14,670 bases of DNA from Octopus sinensis (lineage: Eukaryota), in the NCBI RefSeq assembly GCF_006345805.1, contig NW_021825698.1:1-14670 (forward strand), read 5' to 3'. Made by a program: the position numbers and the translations under genes. The notes beneath the pieces are model-generated. The model was not told where the DNA came from and ran no database searches. It saw nothing but the letters and a program-made list of their open reading frames with translations. Positions 871 through 13,600 of this stretch are shown one piece after another. Every line of letters starts with the position of its first letter. Position 1 is the stretch's first letter.

Positions 871-982
871 GGCGACAAACTGGCTGAATTGTTAAGTACG
901 CCAGGCAAAATACACATTTTGAGTTCAAATTCCACCGAGGCCAACTTTGGCTTTAGTCCTTTCAGAATCGATAAAATAAATA
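871..982 (+). mobile_element. SINE family B fragment (tRNA-like head plus Meta/MESC-like central domain), internally deleted and 3'-truncated
   Basis: A-box-like TGGCTGAATTG (881-891), B-box-like GAGTTCAAAT (921-930), then TCCACCGAGGCCAACTTTGGCTTTAGTCCTTTCAGAATCGATAAAATAAA, colinear with the copy at 2903-2960. The domain name comes from memory of MetaSINE-type sequences. Confidence 0.7.
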
Positions 983-986
983 GCAA

Positions 987-1149
987 GGCGCAGGAGTGGC
1001 TGTGTGGTAAGTAGCTTGTTTACCAACCACATGGTTCCGGGTTCAGTCCCACTGCGTGGCATCTTGGGCAAGTGTCTTCTGCTATAGCCCCGGGCCGACC
1101 AATGCCTTGTGAGTGGATTTGGTAGACGGAAACTGAAAGAAGCCTGTCG

Positions 1150-1194
<45 letters not shown>

Positions 1195-1399
1195 TTGTGT
1201 GTCTGTGTTTGTCCCCCTAGCATTGCTTGACAACCGATACTGGTGTGTTTACGTCGCCGTTACTTAGCGGTTCGGCAAAAGAGACCGATAGAATAAGTAC
1301 TTGGCTTACAAAAAGAATAAGTCCTGGGCTCGATTTGTTCGACTGTAGGCGGTGCTCCAGCATGGCCGCAGTCAAATGATTGAAACAAGTAAAAGAATA
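987..1399 (+). mobile_element. SINE family A copy 1 (tRNA-derived, CORE-like, bipartite with internal TA/TG microsatellite; resembles octopus OR-type SINEs)
   Basis: Head GGCGCAGGAGTGGCTGTGTGG (A box) and GGTTCAGTCCC (B box), CORE-like CTTGGGCAAGTGTCTT, internal microsatellite ~1150-1200, 3' half ending CCAGCATGGCCGCAGTCAAATGATTGAAACAAGTAAAAGA. Near-identical to 3070-3475, 5010-5398 and 12992-13432. Confidence 0.92.
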
Positions 1400-2902: not shown

Positions 2903-3058
2903 GTTCAAATTCCGCCGAGGTCGACTTTGCCTTTCATCCTTTCGGGGTCGATTAAATAAGTACCAGTTACACATTGGGGTCGATGTAATAGACTTAATCC
3001 GTTTGTCTGTCCTTGTTTGTCCCCTCTGTGTTTAGCCCCTTGTGGGTAGTAAAGAAAT
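2903..3058 (+). mobile_element. SINE family B copy, 5'-truncated, 3' end intact
   Basis: GTTCAAATTCCGCCGAGGTCGACTTTGCCTTTCATCCTTTCGGGGTCGATTAAATAAGTACCAG...GGGGTCGATG...GTGGGTAGTAAAGAAA; homologous to 921-982; flanked by (TA)n on both sides. Confidence 0.8.
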
Positions 3059-3069
3059 ATATATATATA

Positions 3070-3475
3070 GGCGTAGGAGTGGGTGTGTGGTAAGTAGCTT
3101 GCTTACCAACCACATGGTTCCGGGTTCAGTCCCACTGCGTGGCACCTGGGGCAAGTTTTTCTACTATAGCCTAGGGCCGACTAGTGCCTTGTGAGTGGAT
3201 TTGGTAGACGGAAACTGAAAGAAGCCCGTCGTATATATGTATATATATATACATATGTGCGTGTGTGTCTGTGTTTGTCCCCCTAGCATTGCTTGACAAC
3301 CGATGCTGGTGTGTTTATGTCCCCGTAACTTAGCGGTTCGGCAAAAGAGACCGATAGAATAAGTACTGGGCTTACAAAGAATAAGTCCCGGGGTCGAGTT
3401 GCTCGATTAGAGGTGGTGCTCCAGCATGGCCGCAGTCAAATGACTGAAACAAGTAAAAGAGTAAAAGGAAAAGAG
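3070..3475 (+). mobile_element. SINE family A copy 2, full length
   Basis: Colinear with copy 1; tail GAAACAAGTAAAAGAGTAAAAGGAAAAGAG; (TA)n on both flanks. Confidence 0.93.
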
Positions 3476-3918
3476 TATATATATATCACTACATTAGAGC
3501 TTTTTAGCTCTTATTTCTAATATAAGCGTTCTGACACCCTAGTCATATTTAGCGAGAATTATAGTTTTCCACGGCTGTCTATATTAATTATTTATATATA
3601 TATATATATATAATATATAGTTTCGAAAATTGAAAGAGAAGCAAGACACGGGAACAAACGGAAAATACACACACAAGATACAGGCGAGCTCATACCTCGA
3701 CAGTTGCCCCAAATTCCCTTACAATTTCACGCCTTTCTATACATATACACAAACATACACGCAGCGTATTATATATGCTGATAGATTGGCTTTCTTTATT
3801 AAATAGAGGAGTAAAGTAAGTTAATGCTGGAGTATTTATTAGGAAGAGTTAGATAAATAAATAAAAATGTACACGTGAAGTCCTCAATTATTGCTAGACA
3901 TGTTACGATCAAAATTGA

Positions 3919-4122
3919 ATAATCAATCAGAATCTTGTTTTTAACTTTCAATGCCGTGCATACCATAAGGTCTGCAAATTTAACGAAGGCCTCAAAAGAC
4001 ATTTTAAGATCCACAAAGATCAGAACTTACCTGAGGCTCTTGGTGGCCCAAATCAAATATGCAATATATGTGGGTGTCCCCGCGGAGTTGATCCCTCGCA
4101 AAGACATCGGAGAATCATTTGA
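3919..4122 (+). pseudogene. Degenerate C2H2 zinc-finger ORF remnant, probably the C-terminus of an RTE-like non-LTR retrotransposon ORF
   Basis: Frame +1 (no start codon, so absent from the ORF track) reads IINQNLVFNFQCRAYHKVCKFNEGLKRHFKIHKDQNLPEALGGPNQICNICGCPRGVDPSQRHRRII*. This gives C-x2-(Y; TAC is one change from TGC)-x3-C-x5-L-x2-H-x3-H, followed by a second CxxC. Upstream in-frame stops at 3916 and 3895. A short 3' UTR ends in (TA)5 at 4170-4179. No TGEKP linker. Confidence 0.55.
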
Positions 4123-4179
4123 GCGTTACTGTTTTCTCTACAGAGAATCTATGAATCTCATCTGTTGACTATATATATA

Positions 4180-4406
4180 AGTAGTTGAATGAATTATCTT
4201 ATTATGGATAATTATCGCTATGGGCTCCGTGTGGGCAGTCACCTTAAAGTTTTTGTTCATCTTGATGCTGACATAAGTTCCTTTTTTTCCTGATGAGAAG
4301 GCGGCATAATGCACCCCTTATTCCTTCGAAATTAGGAATATGCAGCCTTCGAAACATATGTCGAGAATAAGGAATTTTGTTAATTCGTCGTTCACTCCAT
4401 TCTTTC

Positions 4407-4413
<7 letters not shown>
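4180..4413 (+). mobile_element. ~234-bp hammerhead-containing element (solo retrozyme or PLE pseudo-LTR-like) inserted in (TA)n
   Basis: Unique-sequence block bounded by (TA)5 (4170-4179) and (TA)33 (4414-4479), containing a complete type I hammerhead motif. Boundaries are inferred from the TA flanks only. Confidence 0.6.
4275..4377 (+). ncRNA. Minimal type I hammerhead ribozyme
   Basis: Stem I: AAGTTCCTTTTTTTC (4275-4289) with GAGAATAAGGAATTT (4363-4377), 14 of 15 positions paired (2 G-U, 1 U-U). Core CTGATGA at 4290-4296. Stem II: GAAGGC (4297-4302) with GCCTTC (4345-4350). GAAA at 4351-4354. Stem III: C4355-G4360 closing the palindromic loop ATAT. Cleavage triplet GTC, with scission predicted after 4362. 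Confidence 0.88.

Positions 4414-4479
<66 letters not shown>
4414..4479. repeat. (TA)33 microsatellite
   Basis: Read directly. Confidence 0.98.
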
Positions 4480-4483: not shown

Positions 4484-4940
4484 AGGGTAAAATTAATTAA
4501 TTAAGAAGTAATCATAATCTCATCAAGCAGAATTCGCATGAAAAAGACCATTTCATGGTAAGCTTAAGTAATACTTTATAAATAGGGTTCAGCAACGATT
4601 TGCTTCACCACATACCGAATTTTAGAAATAGCAGTCAAAAAATCTTAGCTATTCCTTCTACTTTAAAAGGGGATCCCAGAAAAACCAAAGTACTTGAAAA
4701 CAATCCACGCAGGCAAAAGGGAAAAATAACGAAAATCATTCTATATTAGGTTACCCACGTATGCGCGTTTCGGAATTAGATCGGTATAAAGCATAAATAA
4801 TAAATAATTATACCATACCCGACCATTTTCGGCTCTTCCTTTTAAAGTAGAAGGAATAGCTAAGATTTTTTTGACTGCTATTTCTAAAATTCGGTATGTG
4901 GTGAAGCAAATCGTTGCTGAACCCTATTTATAAGTGTATT
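4484..4940 (-). mobile_element. Fold-back element 1 (PLE pseudo-LTR-like, with inverted partial copy)
   Basis: Inverted arms ~4570-4670 and 4838-4940, identical over the core ~95 bp except a 1-nt indel in an A-run. Spacer of 167 bp. Unpaired ~86-bp extension 4484-4569 starting AGGGTAAAATTAATTAATT. Homologous to 8652-8923. (TA)n on both sides. Confidence 0.7.
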
Positions 4941-5009
4941 ATATATATATATATTATATATATATATATAATATTTTATTATATATATTATATATATATA
5001 TATATATGC

Positions 5010-5398
5010 TTTACTTGTTTCAGTCATTTGACTGCGGCCATGCTGGAGCAACCGCCTTTAGTCGAGCAAATCGACCCCGGGACTTATTCTTTGTAAAACC
5101 CCGTACTTATTCTATCGGTCTTTTTGCCGAACCGCTAAGTAACCGGGACATAAACACACCAGCATCGTTTGTCAAGCAATGCTAGGGGACAAACACAGAC
5201 ACACAACACACACATGTATATATACATATATACGACAGGCTTCTTTCAGTTTTCCATCTACCAATCCAACCACTCACAAGGCTTTGGTCGGCCCGAGGCT
5301 ATAGTAGAAGACACATGCCCAAGATGCCACGTAGTGGGACTGAGCCCGGAACCATGTGGTTGGTTACAAGCTACTTACCACACAGCCACTCCTGCGCC
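5010..5398 (-). mobile_element. SINE family A copy 3
   Basis: Reverse complement of copies 1 and 2 from TTACTTGTTTCAGTCATTTGAC to CCACTCCTGCGCC; embedded in TA-rich tracts (4941-5007, 5399-5750). Confidence 0.93.
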
Positions 5399-5487
5399 TA
5401 TATATATATGTTTTATATATAATATTATATTTATATTTTATATATATATGTATAATATACATATATATATATGTTTGTATATATATG

Positions 5488-6232: not shown

Positions 6233-6254
6233 TATAAATATATATATAATATAT

Positions 6255-6586
6255 ATTTAAATTTAATAAGGGTAGAAATGATATTAATCAATTAAAACCA
6301 GTGGCCTAGCATATTAAAACAATCCGAAGATTAAGAATATATTTTACATACAAAATTTAAAGGACTGACCACTAAAAGTGGACGGTCAACATGCTAGATA
6401 TAGACGTCAAATCGCTATTTTCCACAGCGATTTGACGTCTATATCTAGCATGTTGACCGTCCACTTTTAGTGGTCAGTCCTTTAAATTTTGTATGTAAAA
6501 TATTTTAATCTTCGGATTTTTTTAATATGCTAGGCCACTGGTTTTAATTGATTAATATCAATTTCTACCCTTATTAAATTTTAAAT
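6255..6586. mobile_element. Fold-back element 2 (near-perfect ~330-bp palindrome; diverged relative of elements 1 and 3)
   Basis: Arms ~6255-6416 and 6426-6586 with 9-nt loop ATTTTCCAC. The inner ~78 bp are perfect; the outer part has one substitution and a few small indels. Both ends carry AAGGGTAGAAAT; flanked by (TA)n. Confidence 0.75.
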
Positions 6587-6623
6587 GTATATATATATAT
6601 ATATGTATACATATATATATATG

Positions 6624-6674
<51 letters not shown>

Positions 6675-6675
<1 letters not shown>

Positions 6676-6856
6676 GCAACCACCGTATAACTGGTGTTGA
6701 TGTGTTTCCGTCCCCGTTATCTAATGGTTCAGCAAAAGACTTCGATAAAATAAGTACTACCTTAAAAAAAAAGTACCAGTCGACTAAAAAGTCTTCAGAG
6801 CAGTACCCCAGCATGGTCGAAGTCTAATGACTGAAACAAGTAAAAGATAAAAGATA
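6675..6856 (+). mobile_element. Diverged, 5'-truncated SINE family A-related 3' half
   Basis: GTCCCCGTTATCTAATGGTTCAGCAAAAG..CGATAAAATAAGTAC..CCAGCATGG..TGACTGAAACAAGTAAAAGATAAAAGATA matches the 3' half of family A and follows (TG)n. Confidence 0.75.
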
Positions 6857-8651: not shown

Positions 8652-8923
8652 AGGGTGAAATTAATTAATTTGGAACAATCATTAATTTCACCAAGTAGAT
8701 TTCGGCATGTAAAAGCCCCATTCAAGGAAGGTTTAAGTAATACTAAGTAATTAAGGGTTTAGCAACGATTTGCCTCACCACACACCGAATTTAGAAATAG
8801 CAGACAAAGAGTTTTGGCTATTCTTTCTACTAGTAGAAAGAATAGCCAAAACTCTTTGTCTGCTATTTCTAAATTCGGTGTGTGGTGAGGCAAATCGTTG
8901 CTAAACCCTTAATTACTTAGTAT
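8652..8923 (-). mobile_element. Fold-back element 3 containing a perfect 184-bp zero-spacer palindrome
   Basis: 8740-8831 is the exact reverse complement of 8832-8923 (centre TTCTACT|AGTAGAA). Unpaired 88-bp extension 8652-8739 starting AGGGTGAAATTAATTAATT, colinear with 4484-4667. Possible 12-bp TSD TATGCATATATT at 8625-8636 and 8921-8932. Confidence 0.78.
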
Positions 8924-9407: not shown

Positions 9408-9497
9408 GACAGACAGACAGACGGACGGACGGATGGATGGATGGATGGATGGATGGATGGATGGATGGATGGATGAATGGATGGATGGATGGATGGA

Positions 9498-9542
<45 letters not shown>

Positions 9543-9579
9543 GGACGGACGGACGGACGGACGAATGGATGGATGGATG

Positions 9580-9632
<53 letters not shown>

Positions 9633-9658
9633 GCAGACAGACAGACAGACAGACAGAC

Positions 9659-9710
<52 letters not shown>
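9408..9710. repeat. Compound tetranucleotide array GACA/GACG/GATG/GATA
   Basis: Read directly. Confidence 0.97.
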
Positions 9711-9711
<1 letters not shown>

Positions 9712-10639: not shown

Positions 10640-11187
10640 GAAAAGATGAAAGAAGAAGAAGAAGAAGAAGAAGAAGAAGAAGAAGAAGAAGAAGAAGAAG
10701 AAGAAGAAGAAAGGGGATGAGGAGGAGGAAGAGGAAGAGGGGAGGAGGGGAAGAAGAAGGGAGGAGGTGGAAAAGGAGGCGGGGTGAGGGAGGAAAAGGA
10801 GGAGGTGGAGGGAGGGGAAGGAAATAAGTGGAAGTGAAAAAGAAGAAAGAAAAGGAAATTAGTAGTAGTAAAAGTAGTAGTGTAGGAGGGGAGGGAGGAG
10901 GAGAAGGAGAAGAAAGAGACTGAGAAGAATGAGAAAAGAAGAAGAAGAAGAGAAGAAGAGGAAGAAGAGGAAGAGAAGAGGAAAAGAGAGGAAGAGAAGA
11001 GGAAGAAAAAGGGAGAAGAGGAAGAAGAAGAGGAAGAAGAGGAAAGAAGAAGAGAGAAGAAGAAGAGGAAGAAGAAGAAGAGGAAGAAGGAAGGAGGAAA
11101 AAAAAAAAGAAGAAGAAGAAAGAAGAAAAAGAAGAAGAGGGAAGAAGATGATGATGATGATGATGAATGATGATGATGATGATGAGA
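10640..11187. repeat. Polypurine (GAA/GAG/GGA) tract followed by (GAT)n
   Basis: Pure (GAA)n at ~10648-10711, then a purine-dominated stretch to ~11145. It explains the poly-K/R/E and poly-F/S/L ORFs. Confidence 0.95.
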
Positions 11188-11858
11188 TGATAATATCGAG
11201 AAAAACTGACAAGTAGACAGACAGATAGACAGCCAGATAGATTTATTCATTCATTCATTGATAAAAGATGTCGAAGGGCTTACTTGTAACTCCATAAATG
11301 ATAAACAGAAACCACAGTTGAGTTGTAAAATATATATTCTTAATCAAACAGACTCAAGTGAGTATTTAACTAATTCAAATTTTGTAACACGTTTGTTAAA
11401 AACGTTTTGCACTCATTCTAACGTTAATTACCACTTTCGTGAAGTCAACACTCGAATAAACGAAATTCAGGCAAGAGCATTGCGATTATACGTGTGTTTA
11501 GGTTGACAATTATTTATAGCCTGTACGTTGCGTTATTTTGTAAGTAGGCATGTCAGCAGAGAAGAGATAGGACGAATACTGCCTTAGTCGCTAATTTCTT
11601 CTGTCGTGAAAGGCGAGAATTAAAACGATTTTGAAGAGGGAAGCTCAGCTTAAGTGAGATCTGGTTGTTATTGCTTGTTTATATGTCACTCAAATATAGG
11701 ATTCTGTCAGTGTTTATGCGTATGTTGATAGTATATGTGTATATGACTTGAATACGTGTATGTGTTTAGTGGTGTGAGCGTGTGGTGGTGTGGTCCAGAA
11801 GCTGATGCACGATTTACGAATTATTCTTCTTTAGCCCCTGGTCAACTGTGATCGATTA

Positions 11859-12929: not shown

Positions 12930-13230
12930 TACGAGGAGTGGTGCGAAAAGTTCCTGACTTGAGTGAAAGAAAATATTGGAGGATCAGTTTATTCTTTTAT
13001 GCTGTTATTCTCATCTTTGTTTCAGTCATTTGACTGCGACAGGCTTGGAAGCACCGCCTTTAGTCGAACAAATCACTCAGAACTATTCTTTTGTAAGCCT
13101 AGTACTTATTCTAATATCGGTCTCTTTTGCCGAACTGCTAAGTTACGGGGACGGTACACGCCATCGGTTGTCAGCGATAGTGGGAGGGGAACAAACACAG
13201 ACACACAGACGCACACACACAAACCACAAC

Positions 13231-13270
<40 letters not shown>

Positions 13271-13600
13271 TATATATACGACGAGCTTCGTTCAGTTTCC
13301 GTCTCCTAAATCTATTCACAAGGCTTTGGTCGGCTATAGTAGAAGACACTTGCCAAGGTACCACGTAGTGGACTGAACCTAGAACCATGTGGTTGGGAAG
13401 CAAGCTGCTTACCACACAGCCACTCCTGCGCCTATAGTTAATCACAATTATATTGAACATATTTCCCTCTCAGATTCACACACTTATTGCAGCGGTGGTC
13501 CAGGTTTTCCAATCCCTGTAAAAGAACCCTTAAGGTTGGTCGTCCAACCAGGCCTTTCACGACACCTTTAAAGGCAGAAATTTTTCTGCATGCCCTCGTA
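12930..13600. mobile_element. Tc1/mariner-type MITE (~230 bp when empty) interrupted by SINE A copy 5
   Basis: Imperfect TIRs TA-CGAGGAGTGGTGCGAAAAGTTCCTGACTT (12930-12960) and AAGGCAGAAATTTTTCTGCATGCCCTCG-TA (13571-13600), with TA dinucleotides at both termini. Confidence 0.72.
12992..13432 (-). mobile_element. SINE family A copy 5
   Basis: Reverse complement of family A, ending CCACTCCTGCGCC; internal (TA)n at 13234-13278; tail somewhat decayed. Confidence 0.9.

What the first reader, a model, noticed from the sequence alone, without database searches (positions are those of the whole stretch)
4275..4377. Intact minimal type I hammerhead ribozyme with an unusually elaborate stem II
All catalytic core nucleotides are present (CUGAUGA, GAAA, GUC triplet). 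Stem I has 14 of 15 positions paired. Stem III is only the A-U and C-G pairs closing the palindromic loop AUAU, the hallmark of dimer-acting minimal hammerheads of PLEs and metazoan non-LTR retrozymes (established). Less usual: stem II is extended by a 42-nt insert (GCATA/TATGC plus a TTCCT/AGGAA hairpin), and the motif is a single copy here rather than a tandem. It would therefore need trans-dimerisation, or help from the insert, to cleave.
Basis: partly seen in the sequence, partly recalled or inferred. Interest (0 to 1): 0.9.

Follow-up and report, generated by a model that had tools for sequence, protein, structure and literature searches.

The report
Solo retroelement-type hammerhead ribozyme motif
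The window holds one complete, well-folded type I hammerhead ribozyme motif of the kind animal retroelements scatter through genomes; it is a single, probably stranded copy and a fairly ordinary find, apart from an unusually long second stem.

Summary
The motif is at 4275-4377 (+), exactly as described. It has CUGAUGA, GAAA, a G10.1-C11.1 pair, an A15.1-U16.1 pair and GUC, with the cut predicted after C4362. Helix I pairs 14 of 15 positions. Helix II has 6 bp enclosing 42 nt. Helix III is the 8-nt palindrome ACAUAUGU.

Chance is an unlikely source: 52 Mb of composition-matched random sequence gave nothing comparable. Rfam Hammerhead_1 matches end to end but below its gathering score (22.7 vs 34 bits), with 50 nt where the consensus has 10 in helix II.

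Folding predicts stable helices I and II, a monomeric helix III formed about 1.5% of the time, and a favoured double-hammerhead homodimer.

No second copy, Penelope-like element (PLE) gene or tandem repeat lies in the window. Upstream is the decayed zinc-finger C-terminus of a LINE-like reverse-transcriptase ORF. The hammerhead sits in a ~230-nt non-coding stretch between (TA)5 and (TA)35.

No related copy could be retrieved, so conservation, covariation and activity are untested.

Best reading: a solo copy of a dimer-dependent, retroelement-borne type I hammerhead, a new member of a known kind. Published surveys report single copies as common, so that feature is not unusual. The long helix II is the only atypical trait.

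The parts
4275..4289 (+). Helix I, 5' strand (AAGUUCCUUUUUUUC)
   Evidence: Pairs with 4363-4377 at 14 of 15 positions. Pair probabilities are 0.93-1.0 for the inner 13 pairs.
4290..4296 (+). Catalytic box C3-A9 (CUGAUGA)
   Evidence: Read directly. Aligned to the Hammerhead_1 consensus CUGAcGA.
4297..4302 (+). Helix II base, 5' strand (GAAGGC), beginning with G10.1
   Evidence: Pairs with 4345-4350. Pair probability is 0.99.
4303..4344 (+). 42-nt elaboration of helix II. It comprises a G4303.A4344 mismatch, GCAUA/UAUGC (4304-4308/4339-4343), a 12-nt internal loop, and the hairpin UUCCU-UCGAAAUU-AGGAA (4321-4338). It contains a second CCUUCGAAA box at 4322-4330.
   Evidence: MFE and centroid folds. 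Pair probabilities are 0.95 and 0.99. The second box surfaced as a weak nested descriptor hit.
4345..4350 (+). Helix II base, 3' strand (GCCUUC), ending with C11.1
4351..4354 (+). Catalytic box G12 A13 A14 A15.1 (GAAA)
4354..4361 (+). Helix III / dimerisation palindrome ACAUAUGU (A15.1-U16.1, C15.2-G16.2, loop AUAU)
   Evidence: Monomer pair probability is about 0.015. In the predicted homodimer it forms an 8-bp intermolecular helix. Rfam models these 8 positions as 4 nested pairs with no loop, and all 4 are matched here.
4362..4362 (+). C17: the predicted scissile phosphate is 3' of this base (between 4362 and 4363)
   Evidence: Position follows from hammerhead numbering applied to the sequence. 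Cleavage itself is not tested.
4363..4377 (+). Helix I, 3' strand (GAGAAUAAGGAAUUU)
4263..4273 (+). Outward continuation of helix I, 5' side (UGAUG, UGACA). It pairs with 4378-4390, so the motif sits at the tip of a ~128-nt imperfect hairpin.
   Evidence: MFE fold of 4240-4410 and 4180-4409.
4378..4390 (+). Outward continuation of helix I, 3' side (UGUUA ... CGUCG)
4180..4409 (+). Putative hammerhead-bearing non-coding unit (~230 nt): 95-nt leader, 103-nt motif, 32-nt trailer. The boundaries are inferred, not shown.
   Evidence: It is bounded by (TA)5 and (TA)35. It has no ORF with a family match and no similarity elsewhere in the window.
4170..4179 (.). (TA)5, 47 nt after the stop codon of the upstream ORF remnant. 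This is the possible microsatellite tail of the LINE-like fragment and the left edge of the insertion.
   Evidence: Relatives of the ORF have a microsatellite starting about 50-80 nt after the stop. About 10% of window positions have such a run 30-90 nt downstream by chance.
4410..4479 (.). (TA)35 microsatellite directly downstream of the unit
   Evidence: Tandem Repeats Finder.
3934..4122 (+). Decayed C2H2 zinc-finger C-terminus of a LINE-like reverse-transcriptase ORF, with its stop codon TGA at 4120-4122
   Evidence: phmmer hits P0002 (E = 1e-7) and P0004, P0005, P0007, P0008. tblastn gives 58% identity over 45 aa to P0002. In locus L009 the same tail follows an RVT_1 domain.

Best explanation
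This is a genuine, evolutionarily derived type I hammerhead ribozyme of the metazoan retroelement-associated class, the kind carried by Penelope-like-element pseudo-LTRs and non-LTR retrozymes. Here it is a solo copy inside a ~230-nt non-coding unit. That unit lies in a TA microsatellite just downstream of a decayed LINE-like ORF fragment.

Proposed mechanism: once transcribed, the RNA forms long helix I and extended helix II on its own (modelled). The two-pair helix III is too weak to hold the core together in a monomer (modelled). Two RNAs, or two tandem copies in a source element, pair through the 8-nt palindrome ACAUAUGU to build a double hammerhead. In it, the core of each copy cuts the other after C17, here C4362 (inferred from the classical newt/viroid and PLE cases). 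The products would carry a 2',3'-cyclic phosphate and a 5'-OH.

At this locus there is no partner in cis and no recognisable promoter. The copy is therefore most likely a stranded offspring of an active element elsewhere, and at best cleaves inefficiently in trans.

The 42-nt helix II elaboration is most simply a tolerated lineage-specific insertion at a position where hammerheads accept variable length.
For: - Core and helices are complete.
- Chance expectation is negligible.
- Helices I and II have pair probabilities of 0.93-0.99, whereas monomer helix III has about 0.015. The predicted homodimer (-66.6 vs 2 x -29.6 kcal/mol) is the double hammerhead with an 8-bp helix III.
- Literature: metazoan type I hammerheads have a 1-2 bp helix III with a small palindromic loop and work as dimers. 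PLE hammerheads have a larger helix II, G10.1-C11.1 and palindromic 15.2-16.2. Most are found as single motifs (PMC4209133). Solo retrozyme monomers are reported (10.64898/2026.07.22.740005). PLE hammerheads lie near element 3' ends, and several PLE clades favour (TA)n targets (PMC8557442).
- Context is a nest of retroelement debris: the LINE-like ORF tail at 3934-4122, the flanking TA repeats, and SINE-like and foldback repeats around it.
Against: - No related copy was found anywhere I could search. Family membership, conservation and covariation are therefore untested.
- No PLE reverse transcriptase or GIY-YIG remnant and no tandem repeat lie in the window.
- The motif lacks the extra nucleotide between A9 and G10.1 that is typical of PLE min-HHRs.
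- It lacks the 6-bp/4-bp helices with loop-loop contacts typical of retrozyme hammerheads (compared with PMC4209133).
- The Rfam score is below the gathering threshold.
- The (TA)5 left boundary has about a 10% chance of being coincidental.
Confidence: 0.62

Rival explanations
1. The hammerhead is an integral part of the 3' UTR of the LINE-like element whose zinc-finger ORF tail lies just upstream. Alternatively, it belongs to a SINE-like partner that shares the LINE's (TA)n tail and is mobilised by it. Either would be a hammerhead-LINE association rather than a PLE or retrozyme one.
For: The motif is on the same strand as the ORF remnant, 153 nt after its stop, and is followed by (TA)35. Relatives of this ORF end in a microsatellite tail. 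No PLE gene is present. Schistosome SINE-like elements with hammerheads are a precedent for hammerhead-bearing non-autonomous elements (PMC6765202).
Against: Five related loci (L004-L009) have only about 50-80 nt between the stop and the microsatellite, and none has a hammerhead. Their downstream sequence is short, however, and their nucleotide similarity to the window ends before the stop. A cut 47 nt upstream of the 3' tail would remove the end that target-primed reverse transcription needs (inference). The (TA)5 at 4170-4179 fits the LINE fragment ending there.
Confidence: 0.15
2. The motif cleaves efficiently as a monomer. The long helix I and the elaborated helix II, with its U.U and G.A non-canonical pairs at matching distance from the core, would supply tertiary contacts or stacking that compensate for the weak helix III.
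For: The U4284.U4368 mismatch is the 6th position of helix I, and G4303.A4344 is the 7th of helix II. These are roughly where loop-loop contacts sit in natural hammerheads (geometry from established structures; positions). Hammerheads in invertebrate retrozymes are reported to self-cleave efficiently. An axolotl hammerhead with a 2-bp helix III and a tetraloop, described as similar to the invertebrate ones, cleaved 22% in one hour as a monomer (PMC7229834).
Against: No recognised tertiary-contact motif is present. The monomer helix III is predicted to be almost never formed. Comparable PLE motifs showed no detectable monomer activity (PMC4209133).
Confidence: 0.12
3. It is a host-domesticated hammerhead acting on a cellular transcript, for example in an intron or UTR, like the conserved intronic hammerheads of amniotes.
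For: The motif is remarkably undecayed, whereas the neighbouring ORF remnant is badly degraded.
Against: No exon or gene was recognisable in the window. The surroundings are microsatellites and transposon debris. No orthologous copy could be retrieved to test conservation.
Confidence: 0.05
4. It is a chance look-alike: an AT-rich inverted repeat that happens to carry the core boxes and has no ribozyme ancestry.
For: The Rfam score is below threshold. Helix I is low-complexity (U-rich against A/G-rich). The window is full of inverted repeats.
Against: 52 Mb of matched random sequence produced nothing close. All 13 conserved positions are correct together: G10.1-C11.1, the palindromic helix III and the three-way junction geometry.
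Confidence: 0.05

Closest known systems
Canonical metazoan type I hammerheads (Rfam RF00163: newt satellite 2, schistosome Sm-alpha, non-LTR retrozyme hammerheads)
   Same: It is type I, with helix I open. The core is identical, including G10.1-C11.1. Helix III is reduced to 2 bp with a palindromic tetraloop, which implies a double-hammerhead mode of action. The full-length match to the Rfam model includes the four 'pairs' of the palindrome (PMC4209133, PMC7229834).
   Different: Helix II encloses 42 nt beyond a 6-bp base, where a 4-bp stem plus a small loop is usual. Helix I is a 15-bp near-perfect duplex (about 25 bp with its extension) rather than 6 bp plus loop 1. No recognisable loop 1/loop 2 contact is present. 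It is not in a 170-400-bp tandem array. The score is below Rfam's gathering threshold.
Minimal hammerheads of Penelope-like elements (Cervera & de la Pena 2014; Lunse, Weinberg & Breaker 2017)
   Same: Helix II is larger than usual, G10.1-C11.1 is present, 15.2-16.2 and loop 3 are palindromic, dimer dependence is predicted, it occurs as a dispersed single motif, and it sits next to a (TA)n tract.
   Different: There is no unpaired nucleotide between A9 and G10.1. Helix I is long rather than 4-5 bp. A real, if tiny, helix III loop is present. No pseudo-LTR, reverse transcriptase or GIY-YIG endonuclease remnant lies in the window.
Schistosome Sm-alpha / Sj-alpha SINE-like hammerhead elements
   Same: A short non-coding dispersed unit carries one type I hammerhead in a retrotransposon-rich context.
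   Different: No tRNA-like or pol III promoter part was detected, and no copy family could be shown here.

Membership tests
Hammerhead ribozyme, type I (RF00163) | Conserved core: C3 U4 G5 A6 N7 G8 A9, G12 A13 A14, A15.1-U16.1, H17 | tested here: met
   CUGAUGA at 4290-4296, GAAA at 4351-4354, U4361, C4362.
Hammerhead ribozyme, type I (RF00163) | Three helices around the core, with helix I open-ended and helices II and III closed | tested here: met
   Helices I and II are in the MFE and centroid folds with probability 0.93-0.99. Helix III exists only as 2 bp, or as an 8-bp dimer helix.
Hammerhead ribozyme, type I (RF00163) | Score at or above Rfam's curated gathering threshold | tested here: not met
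   22.7 bits against 34. The sequence has 50 nt where the model shows 10 in helix II. There is no hit in whole-window scans. This is an operational threshold rather than a structural requirement.
Hammerhead ribozyme, type I (RF00163) | Conservation of the core and compensatory changes in the helices among homologues | not testable with these tools
   No homologous copy was retrievable. The source genome is not searchable here.
Hammerhead ribozyme, type I (RF00163) | Site-specific self-cleavage 3' of position 17 | not testable with these tools
   Needs in vitro transcription or RNA end mapping.
PLE minimal hammerhead (Cervera & de la Pena 2014) | Located in a pseudo-LTR flanking an RT plus GIY-YIG ORF | tested here: not met
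   The six-frame ORF list and a Pfam scan of the ORFs flanking the motif show no RT or GIY-YIG. The only nearby coding remnant is a C2H2 tail of a LINE-like ORF. Truncated solo copies would also look like this.
PLE minimal hammerhead (Cervera & de la Pena 2014) | Unpaired nucleotide between A9 and G10.1 | tested here: not met
   A9 (4296) is followed directly by G4297, which pairs with C4350.
PLE minimal hammerhead (Cervera & de la Pena 2014) | Enlarged helix II (6-8 bp) with G10.1-C11.1, and palindromic 15.2-16.2 / loop 3 | tested here: met
   6 bp plus a 5-bp extension, and the palindrome ACAUAUGU.
PLE minimal hammerhead (Cervera & de la Pena 2014) | Short helix I (4-5 bp) | tested here: not met
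   Helix I is 15 positions, 14 of them paired, and extends further outward.
Metazoan non-LTR retrozyme | Tandem repeats of 170-400 bp, each with a type I hammerhead | tested here: not met
   There is one motif only and no tandem array of that period. Solo monomers are described for retrozyme families (10.64898/2026.07.22.740005). The unit size of about 230 nt is compatible.
Metazoan non-LTR retrozyme | Linear and circular RNAs of unit length in transcriptomes | not testable with these tools
   No RNA-seq access.

The most novel reading that the evidence does not exclude
The ~230-nt unit is a hammerhead-bearing, (TA)n-tailed non-autonomous retroelement that is mobilised by the (TA)n-tailed LINE-like element next to it, or forms part of that element's 3' UTR, rather than by a Penelope-like element. 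The helix II insert, with its second CCUUCGAAA box, would then act as a functional module, for example a reverse-transcriptase recognition hairpin or a conformational switch. That would be a new ribozyme-retrotransposon partnership.
Probability: 0.1. Interest if true: 0.6.

Novelty: new member of a known kind. Interest (0 to 1): 0.3.

Why it matters
If the reading is right, the locus adds one more dispersed retroelement-type hammerhead to the very large number already catalogued in animal genomes, so its general importance is modest.

Two points give it some value. First, the helix II elaboration and the very long helix I fall outside the descriptors and the Rfam threshold usually used for genome surveys. 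Motifs like this one are therefore systematically missed. Second, it sits right after a LINE-like ORF tail inside a TA microsatellite. Once the source genome can be searched, that context allows a cheap test of which retrotransposon machinery spreads such hammerheads.

Tried and rejected
1. Rfam at gathering threshold and at E<=10 over the whole window gave no hammerhead. Only simple-repeat and palindrome 'miRNA' look-alikes appeared. The hammerhead match shows up only in a local scan.
2. I looked for family copies through spurious ORFs. The 54-aa minus-strand ORF covering the motif is not on record and has no homologue. The word-indexed search also missed P0002 for the 67-aa query, despite an 11-residue identical run. 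These negatives are therefore weak.
3. DNA pattern scans:
   - The family-specific pattern gave 0 hits in metagenomes.
   - The general long-helix-II pattern gave 3 metagenome hits, all one unrelated sequence without a helix II, so chance.
   - There were 0 hits in viral contigs and 0 in prokaryotic genomes.
4. I tested whether upstream ORFs were a PLE GIY-YIG endonuclease. Pfam gave nothing, and exhaustive phmmer showed instead a C2H2 zinc-finger tail of LINE-like ORFs.
5. I tested whether relatives of that ORF carry a hammerhead in their 3' UTR. None did in L004-L009, and a search with P0002 found only P0002 itself.
6. I tried to identify the organism by looking up window ORFs and by searching for the SRA run number in papers. 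Nothing came back. My impression that the SINE-like repeats resemble octopus SINEs is memory only and unverified.
7. A tRNA-like head or promoter for the unit was not found (the promoter scan is bacterial-type and not informative here).
8. I considered that the helix II insert arose by tandem duplication of the 3' half (4309-4339 vs 4340-4375). The alignment is weak and is confounded by shared pairing constraints, so this stays a hint only.
9. An alternative register uses the first CCUUCGAAA box, and an alternative pairing joins 4316-4323 with 4365-4372. Both have a predicted probability of about 0.

Full report
OBSERVATION.

- Helix I pairs 4275-4289 with 4363-4377 at 14 of 15 positions. Two of these are G.U pairs, and there is one U.U mismatch at 4284/4368.
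- The core boxes are CUGAUGA (4290-4296) and GAAA (4351-4354).
- Helix II starts with the canonical G10.1-C11.1 pair (G4297-C4350) and runs 6 bp (GAAGGC/GCCUUC).
- Helix II encloses 42 nt (4303-4344). They fold into a G.A mismatch, a 5-bp GCAUA/UAUGC segment, a 12-nt internal loop and a UUCCU/AGGAA hairpin.
- Helix III consists only of A4354-U4361 and C4355-G4360 around AUAU. The eight bases ACAUAUGU form a perfect palindrome.
- C17 is C4362, so the predicted cut lies between 4362 and 4363.

The minimum-free-energy fold of the + strand reproduces helices I and II (-29.6 kcal/mol, z = -3.9 against 200 shuffles). The opposite strand folds less well (z = -2.2) and carries no core.

IS IT MORE THAN CHANCE? 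Rfam at its curated thresholds reports nothing in the window. A permissive whole-window scan also misses the motif. A local scan of 4255-4395 aligns the complete Hammerhead_1 model (positions 1-45 of 45) at 22.7 bits, E = 0.0013 for that search, against a gathering score of 34. Helix II holds 50 nt where the consensus has 10.

Rfam models helix III as four nested pairs with no loop, that is, as the dimerisation palindrome. All four are matched here.

I also wrote a descriptor: exact core, helix II inward, helix I outward. I ran it on 52 Mb of second-order-Markov sequence trained on the window.
- 48 hits had helices of at least 3 bp.
- One hit had helix I of at least 5 bp together with helix II of at least 6 bp.
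- No hit had helix I of at least 8 bp with one mismatch allowed.
- The real motif has 14 bp in helix I, 6 bp in helix II (11 with one mismatch) and the palindrome.

Extrapolating the fall-off per extra base pair (my estimate), a chance motif this good is expected far less than once in a genome of a few gigabases.

FOLDING AND LIKELY MODE OF ACTION. Partition-function calculations were run on three transcript lengths.
- Pair probabilities are 0.99 for helix II, 0.93-1.0 for most of helix I and 0.95-0.99 for the insert helices.
- Monomeric helix III reaches only about 0.015.
- The homodimer minimum-energy structure (-66.6 kcal/mol against 2 x -29.6) is the classical double hammerhead. The two palindromes form an 8-bp intermolecular helix III, and helix I forms between the 5' strand of one molecule and the 3' strand of the other.

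This matches the published behaviour of metazoan type I and PLE hammerheads. Their short palindromic helix III prevents efficient monomer cleavage, and activity appears in dimeric constructs (PMC4209133, PMC7229834, PMC6765202).

Helix I continues outward (4263-4273 with 4378-4390). The motif therefore sits at the tip of a hairpin of about 128 nt.

The insert contains a second CCUUCGAAA box (4322-4330) that could pair with GAAGG in another register. It also contains an 8-mer (4316-4323) perfectly complementary to 4365-4372. Both alternatives have a predicted probability of about zero.

The segments 4309-4339 and 4340-4375 abut and share their ends. This hints weakly that the insert arose by a partial tandem duplication of the 3' half. 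I do not rely on it.

SURROUNDINGS. The window looks eukaryotic.
- It has dozens of microsatellites.
- It has five copies of a SINE-like repeat of about 430 bp, and two foldback families.
- It has no tRNA gene and no convincing coding gene.
- It has no second hammerhead, no tandem array of retrozyme period and no other copy of the 3621-4409 region.

The only coding remnant nearby is an ORF fragment on the same strand at 3934-4119, with its stop at 4120-4122. An exhaustive phmmer search found relatives. These are P0002 (58% identity over 45 aa by tblastn) and several C2H2 zinc-finger tails (P0004, P0005, P0007, P0008).

In locus L009 a tail of this kind sits at the end of an ORF series. That series has an RVT_1 reverse-transcriptase domain, a YADD box and an 'RLRWVGHV' segment. 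From general knowledge this is the architecture of a LINE-type ORF2, not of a canonical PLE, which ends in a GIY-YIG endonuclease.

In the related loci where it could be seen (L004/L005, L007, L009), the stop codon is followed after about 50-80 nt by a TA/TG-rich microsatellite. None of the related loci L004-L009 has a hammerhead.

In the window the stop is followed after 47 nt by (TA)5 (4170-4179). Then come 95 nt of unique sequence, the 103-nt motif and 32 nt more, and then (TA)35 (4410-4479). A foldback element starts immediately after that microsatellite.

The simplest reading is that the LINE-like fragment ends in its TA tail, and that a hammerhead-bearing unit of about 230 nt (4180-4409) sits inside that tail. 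The support is only moderate. About 10% of window positions have a (TA)5+ run 30-90 nt downstream by chance. No empty site or second copy is available to fix the boundaries.

RELATED COPIES. I could not retrieve any.
- The ORF overlapping the motif is not on record and has no homologue.
- Family-specific and general patterns gave nothing in metagenomes, apart from one chance sequence seen three times.
- Nothing was found in viral contigs or in prokaryotic genomes.
- The collections at hand do not include the source genome, and the word-indexed protein search demonstrably misses relatives.

These negatives therefore say little about copy number. Conservation, covariation and activity remain untested.

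COMPARISON WITH KNOWN FAMILIES. The motif works like the dimer-dependent type I hammerheads of animal retroelements. As to membership:
- It meets the structural definition of a type I hammerhead: core, three helices, G10.1-C11.1 and A15.1-U16.1. It falls short of Rfam's operational score because of the helix II insert.
- It shares the enlarged helix II and palindromic helix III of PLE minimal hammerheads. It lacks their extra nucleotide after A9, their short helix I and any PLE gene context (PMC4209133).
- It shares unit size and hammerhead type with non-LTR retrozymes. It is not in a tandem array and lacks their 6-bp/4-bp helices with loop-loop contacts (PMC7229834).

Solo copies are common for both groups (PMC4209133; 10.64898/2026.07.22.740005), so single-copy status is not a peculiarity. 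PLE hammerheads lie near element 3' ends, and several PLE clades prefer (TA)n targets (PMC8557442). This is compatible with the context here but is not proof.

VERDICT. The best explanation (confidence about 0.6) is a stranded solo copy of a retroelement-borne, dimer-dependent type I hammerhead.

The main rival (about 0.15) is that it belongs to the 3' end of the adjacent LINE-like element or to a SINE-like partner of it, which would be a new association. A monomer-active variant (about 0.12), a domesticated host ribozyme (about 0.05) and a chance look-alike (about 0.05) are less likely.

It is a new member of a known kind, and its one atypical trait is the long helix II. Interest is modest (0.3). 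The decisive work is a search of the source genome followed by a simple cleavage assay.

Noticed in passing
window 4484-4943 and 8652-8923: Two copies (81-87% identical) of a foldback/MITE-like element. The first has arms at 4569-4670 and 4838-4941, 97% complementary over 104 nt, with a perfect 67-nt core at 4576-4642 / 4867-4933. The second is a perfect 92-nt palindrome with no spacer (8740-8831 / 8832-8923). Both start right next to TA-rich microsatellites. A perfect palindrome with no spacer could also be an assembly artefact.
   Followed up: partly
window 6240-6602: A different foldback, 93% self-complementary over about 360 nt, with inner arms 6336-6416 / 6426-6506 at 99%. It is flanked by (TA)n on both sides. 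Its tip scores as 'mir-559' at 64.5 bits, below the gathering score of 95, which is a look-alike caused by the long hairpin.
   Followed up: partly
window 973-1399, 3040-3470, 5010-5413 (-), 13017-13436 (-), 6616-6853 (partial): A SINE-like interspersed repeat of about 430 bp in five copies (71-90% identical to the copy at 3040-3470), each with an internal TA/TG microsatellite. ARAGORN finds no tRNA-like head. From memory it resembles cephalopod SINEs; this is unverified.
   Followed up: partly
window 4322-4330 vs 4346-4354; 4309-4339 vs 4340-4375: The box CCUUCGAAA occurs twice within the motif. The helix II insert abuts a segment with similar ends (ATGCA...AGGAAU). This gives a weak nested hammerhead-like register and hints at a partial tandem duplication. 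The alternative folds have a predicted probability of about 0.
   Followed up: partly
window 3934-4122 (+); loci L004, L006-L009: A decayed C2H2 zinc-finger C-terminus of a LINE-like RT ORF. In several relatives from other assemblies the stop is followed by about 50-80 nt and a TA/TG microsatellite, which suggests a microsatellite-tailed LINE clade.
   Followed up: partly
window 9432-9711 and 10650-11190: A 280-nt compound tetranucleotide array (GATA/GACA/GGAT/GGAC) and a purine-only tract of about 540 nt ((GAA)n, (GGA)n, (GAT)n) with extreme GC and AT skew. These create long spurious ORFs on both strands.
   Followed up: no
tool behaviour, vs 33: The word-indexed protein search reported no candidate for the 67-aa query. 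The exhaustive search found P0002, which shares an 11-residue identical run with that query. Negative results from the indexed search should therefore be read cautiously.
   Followed up: yes
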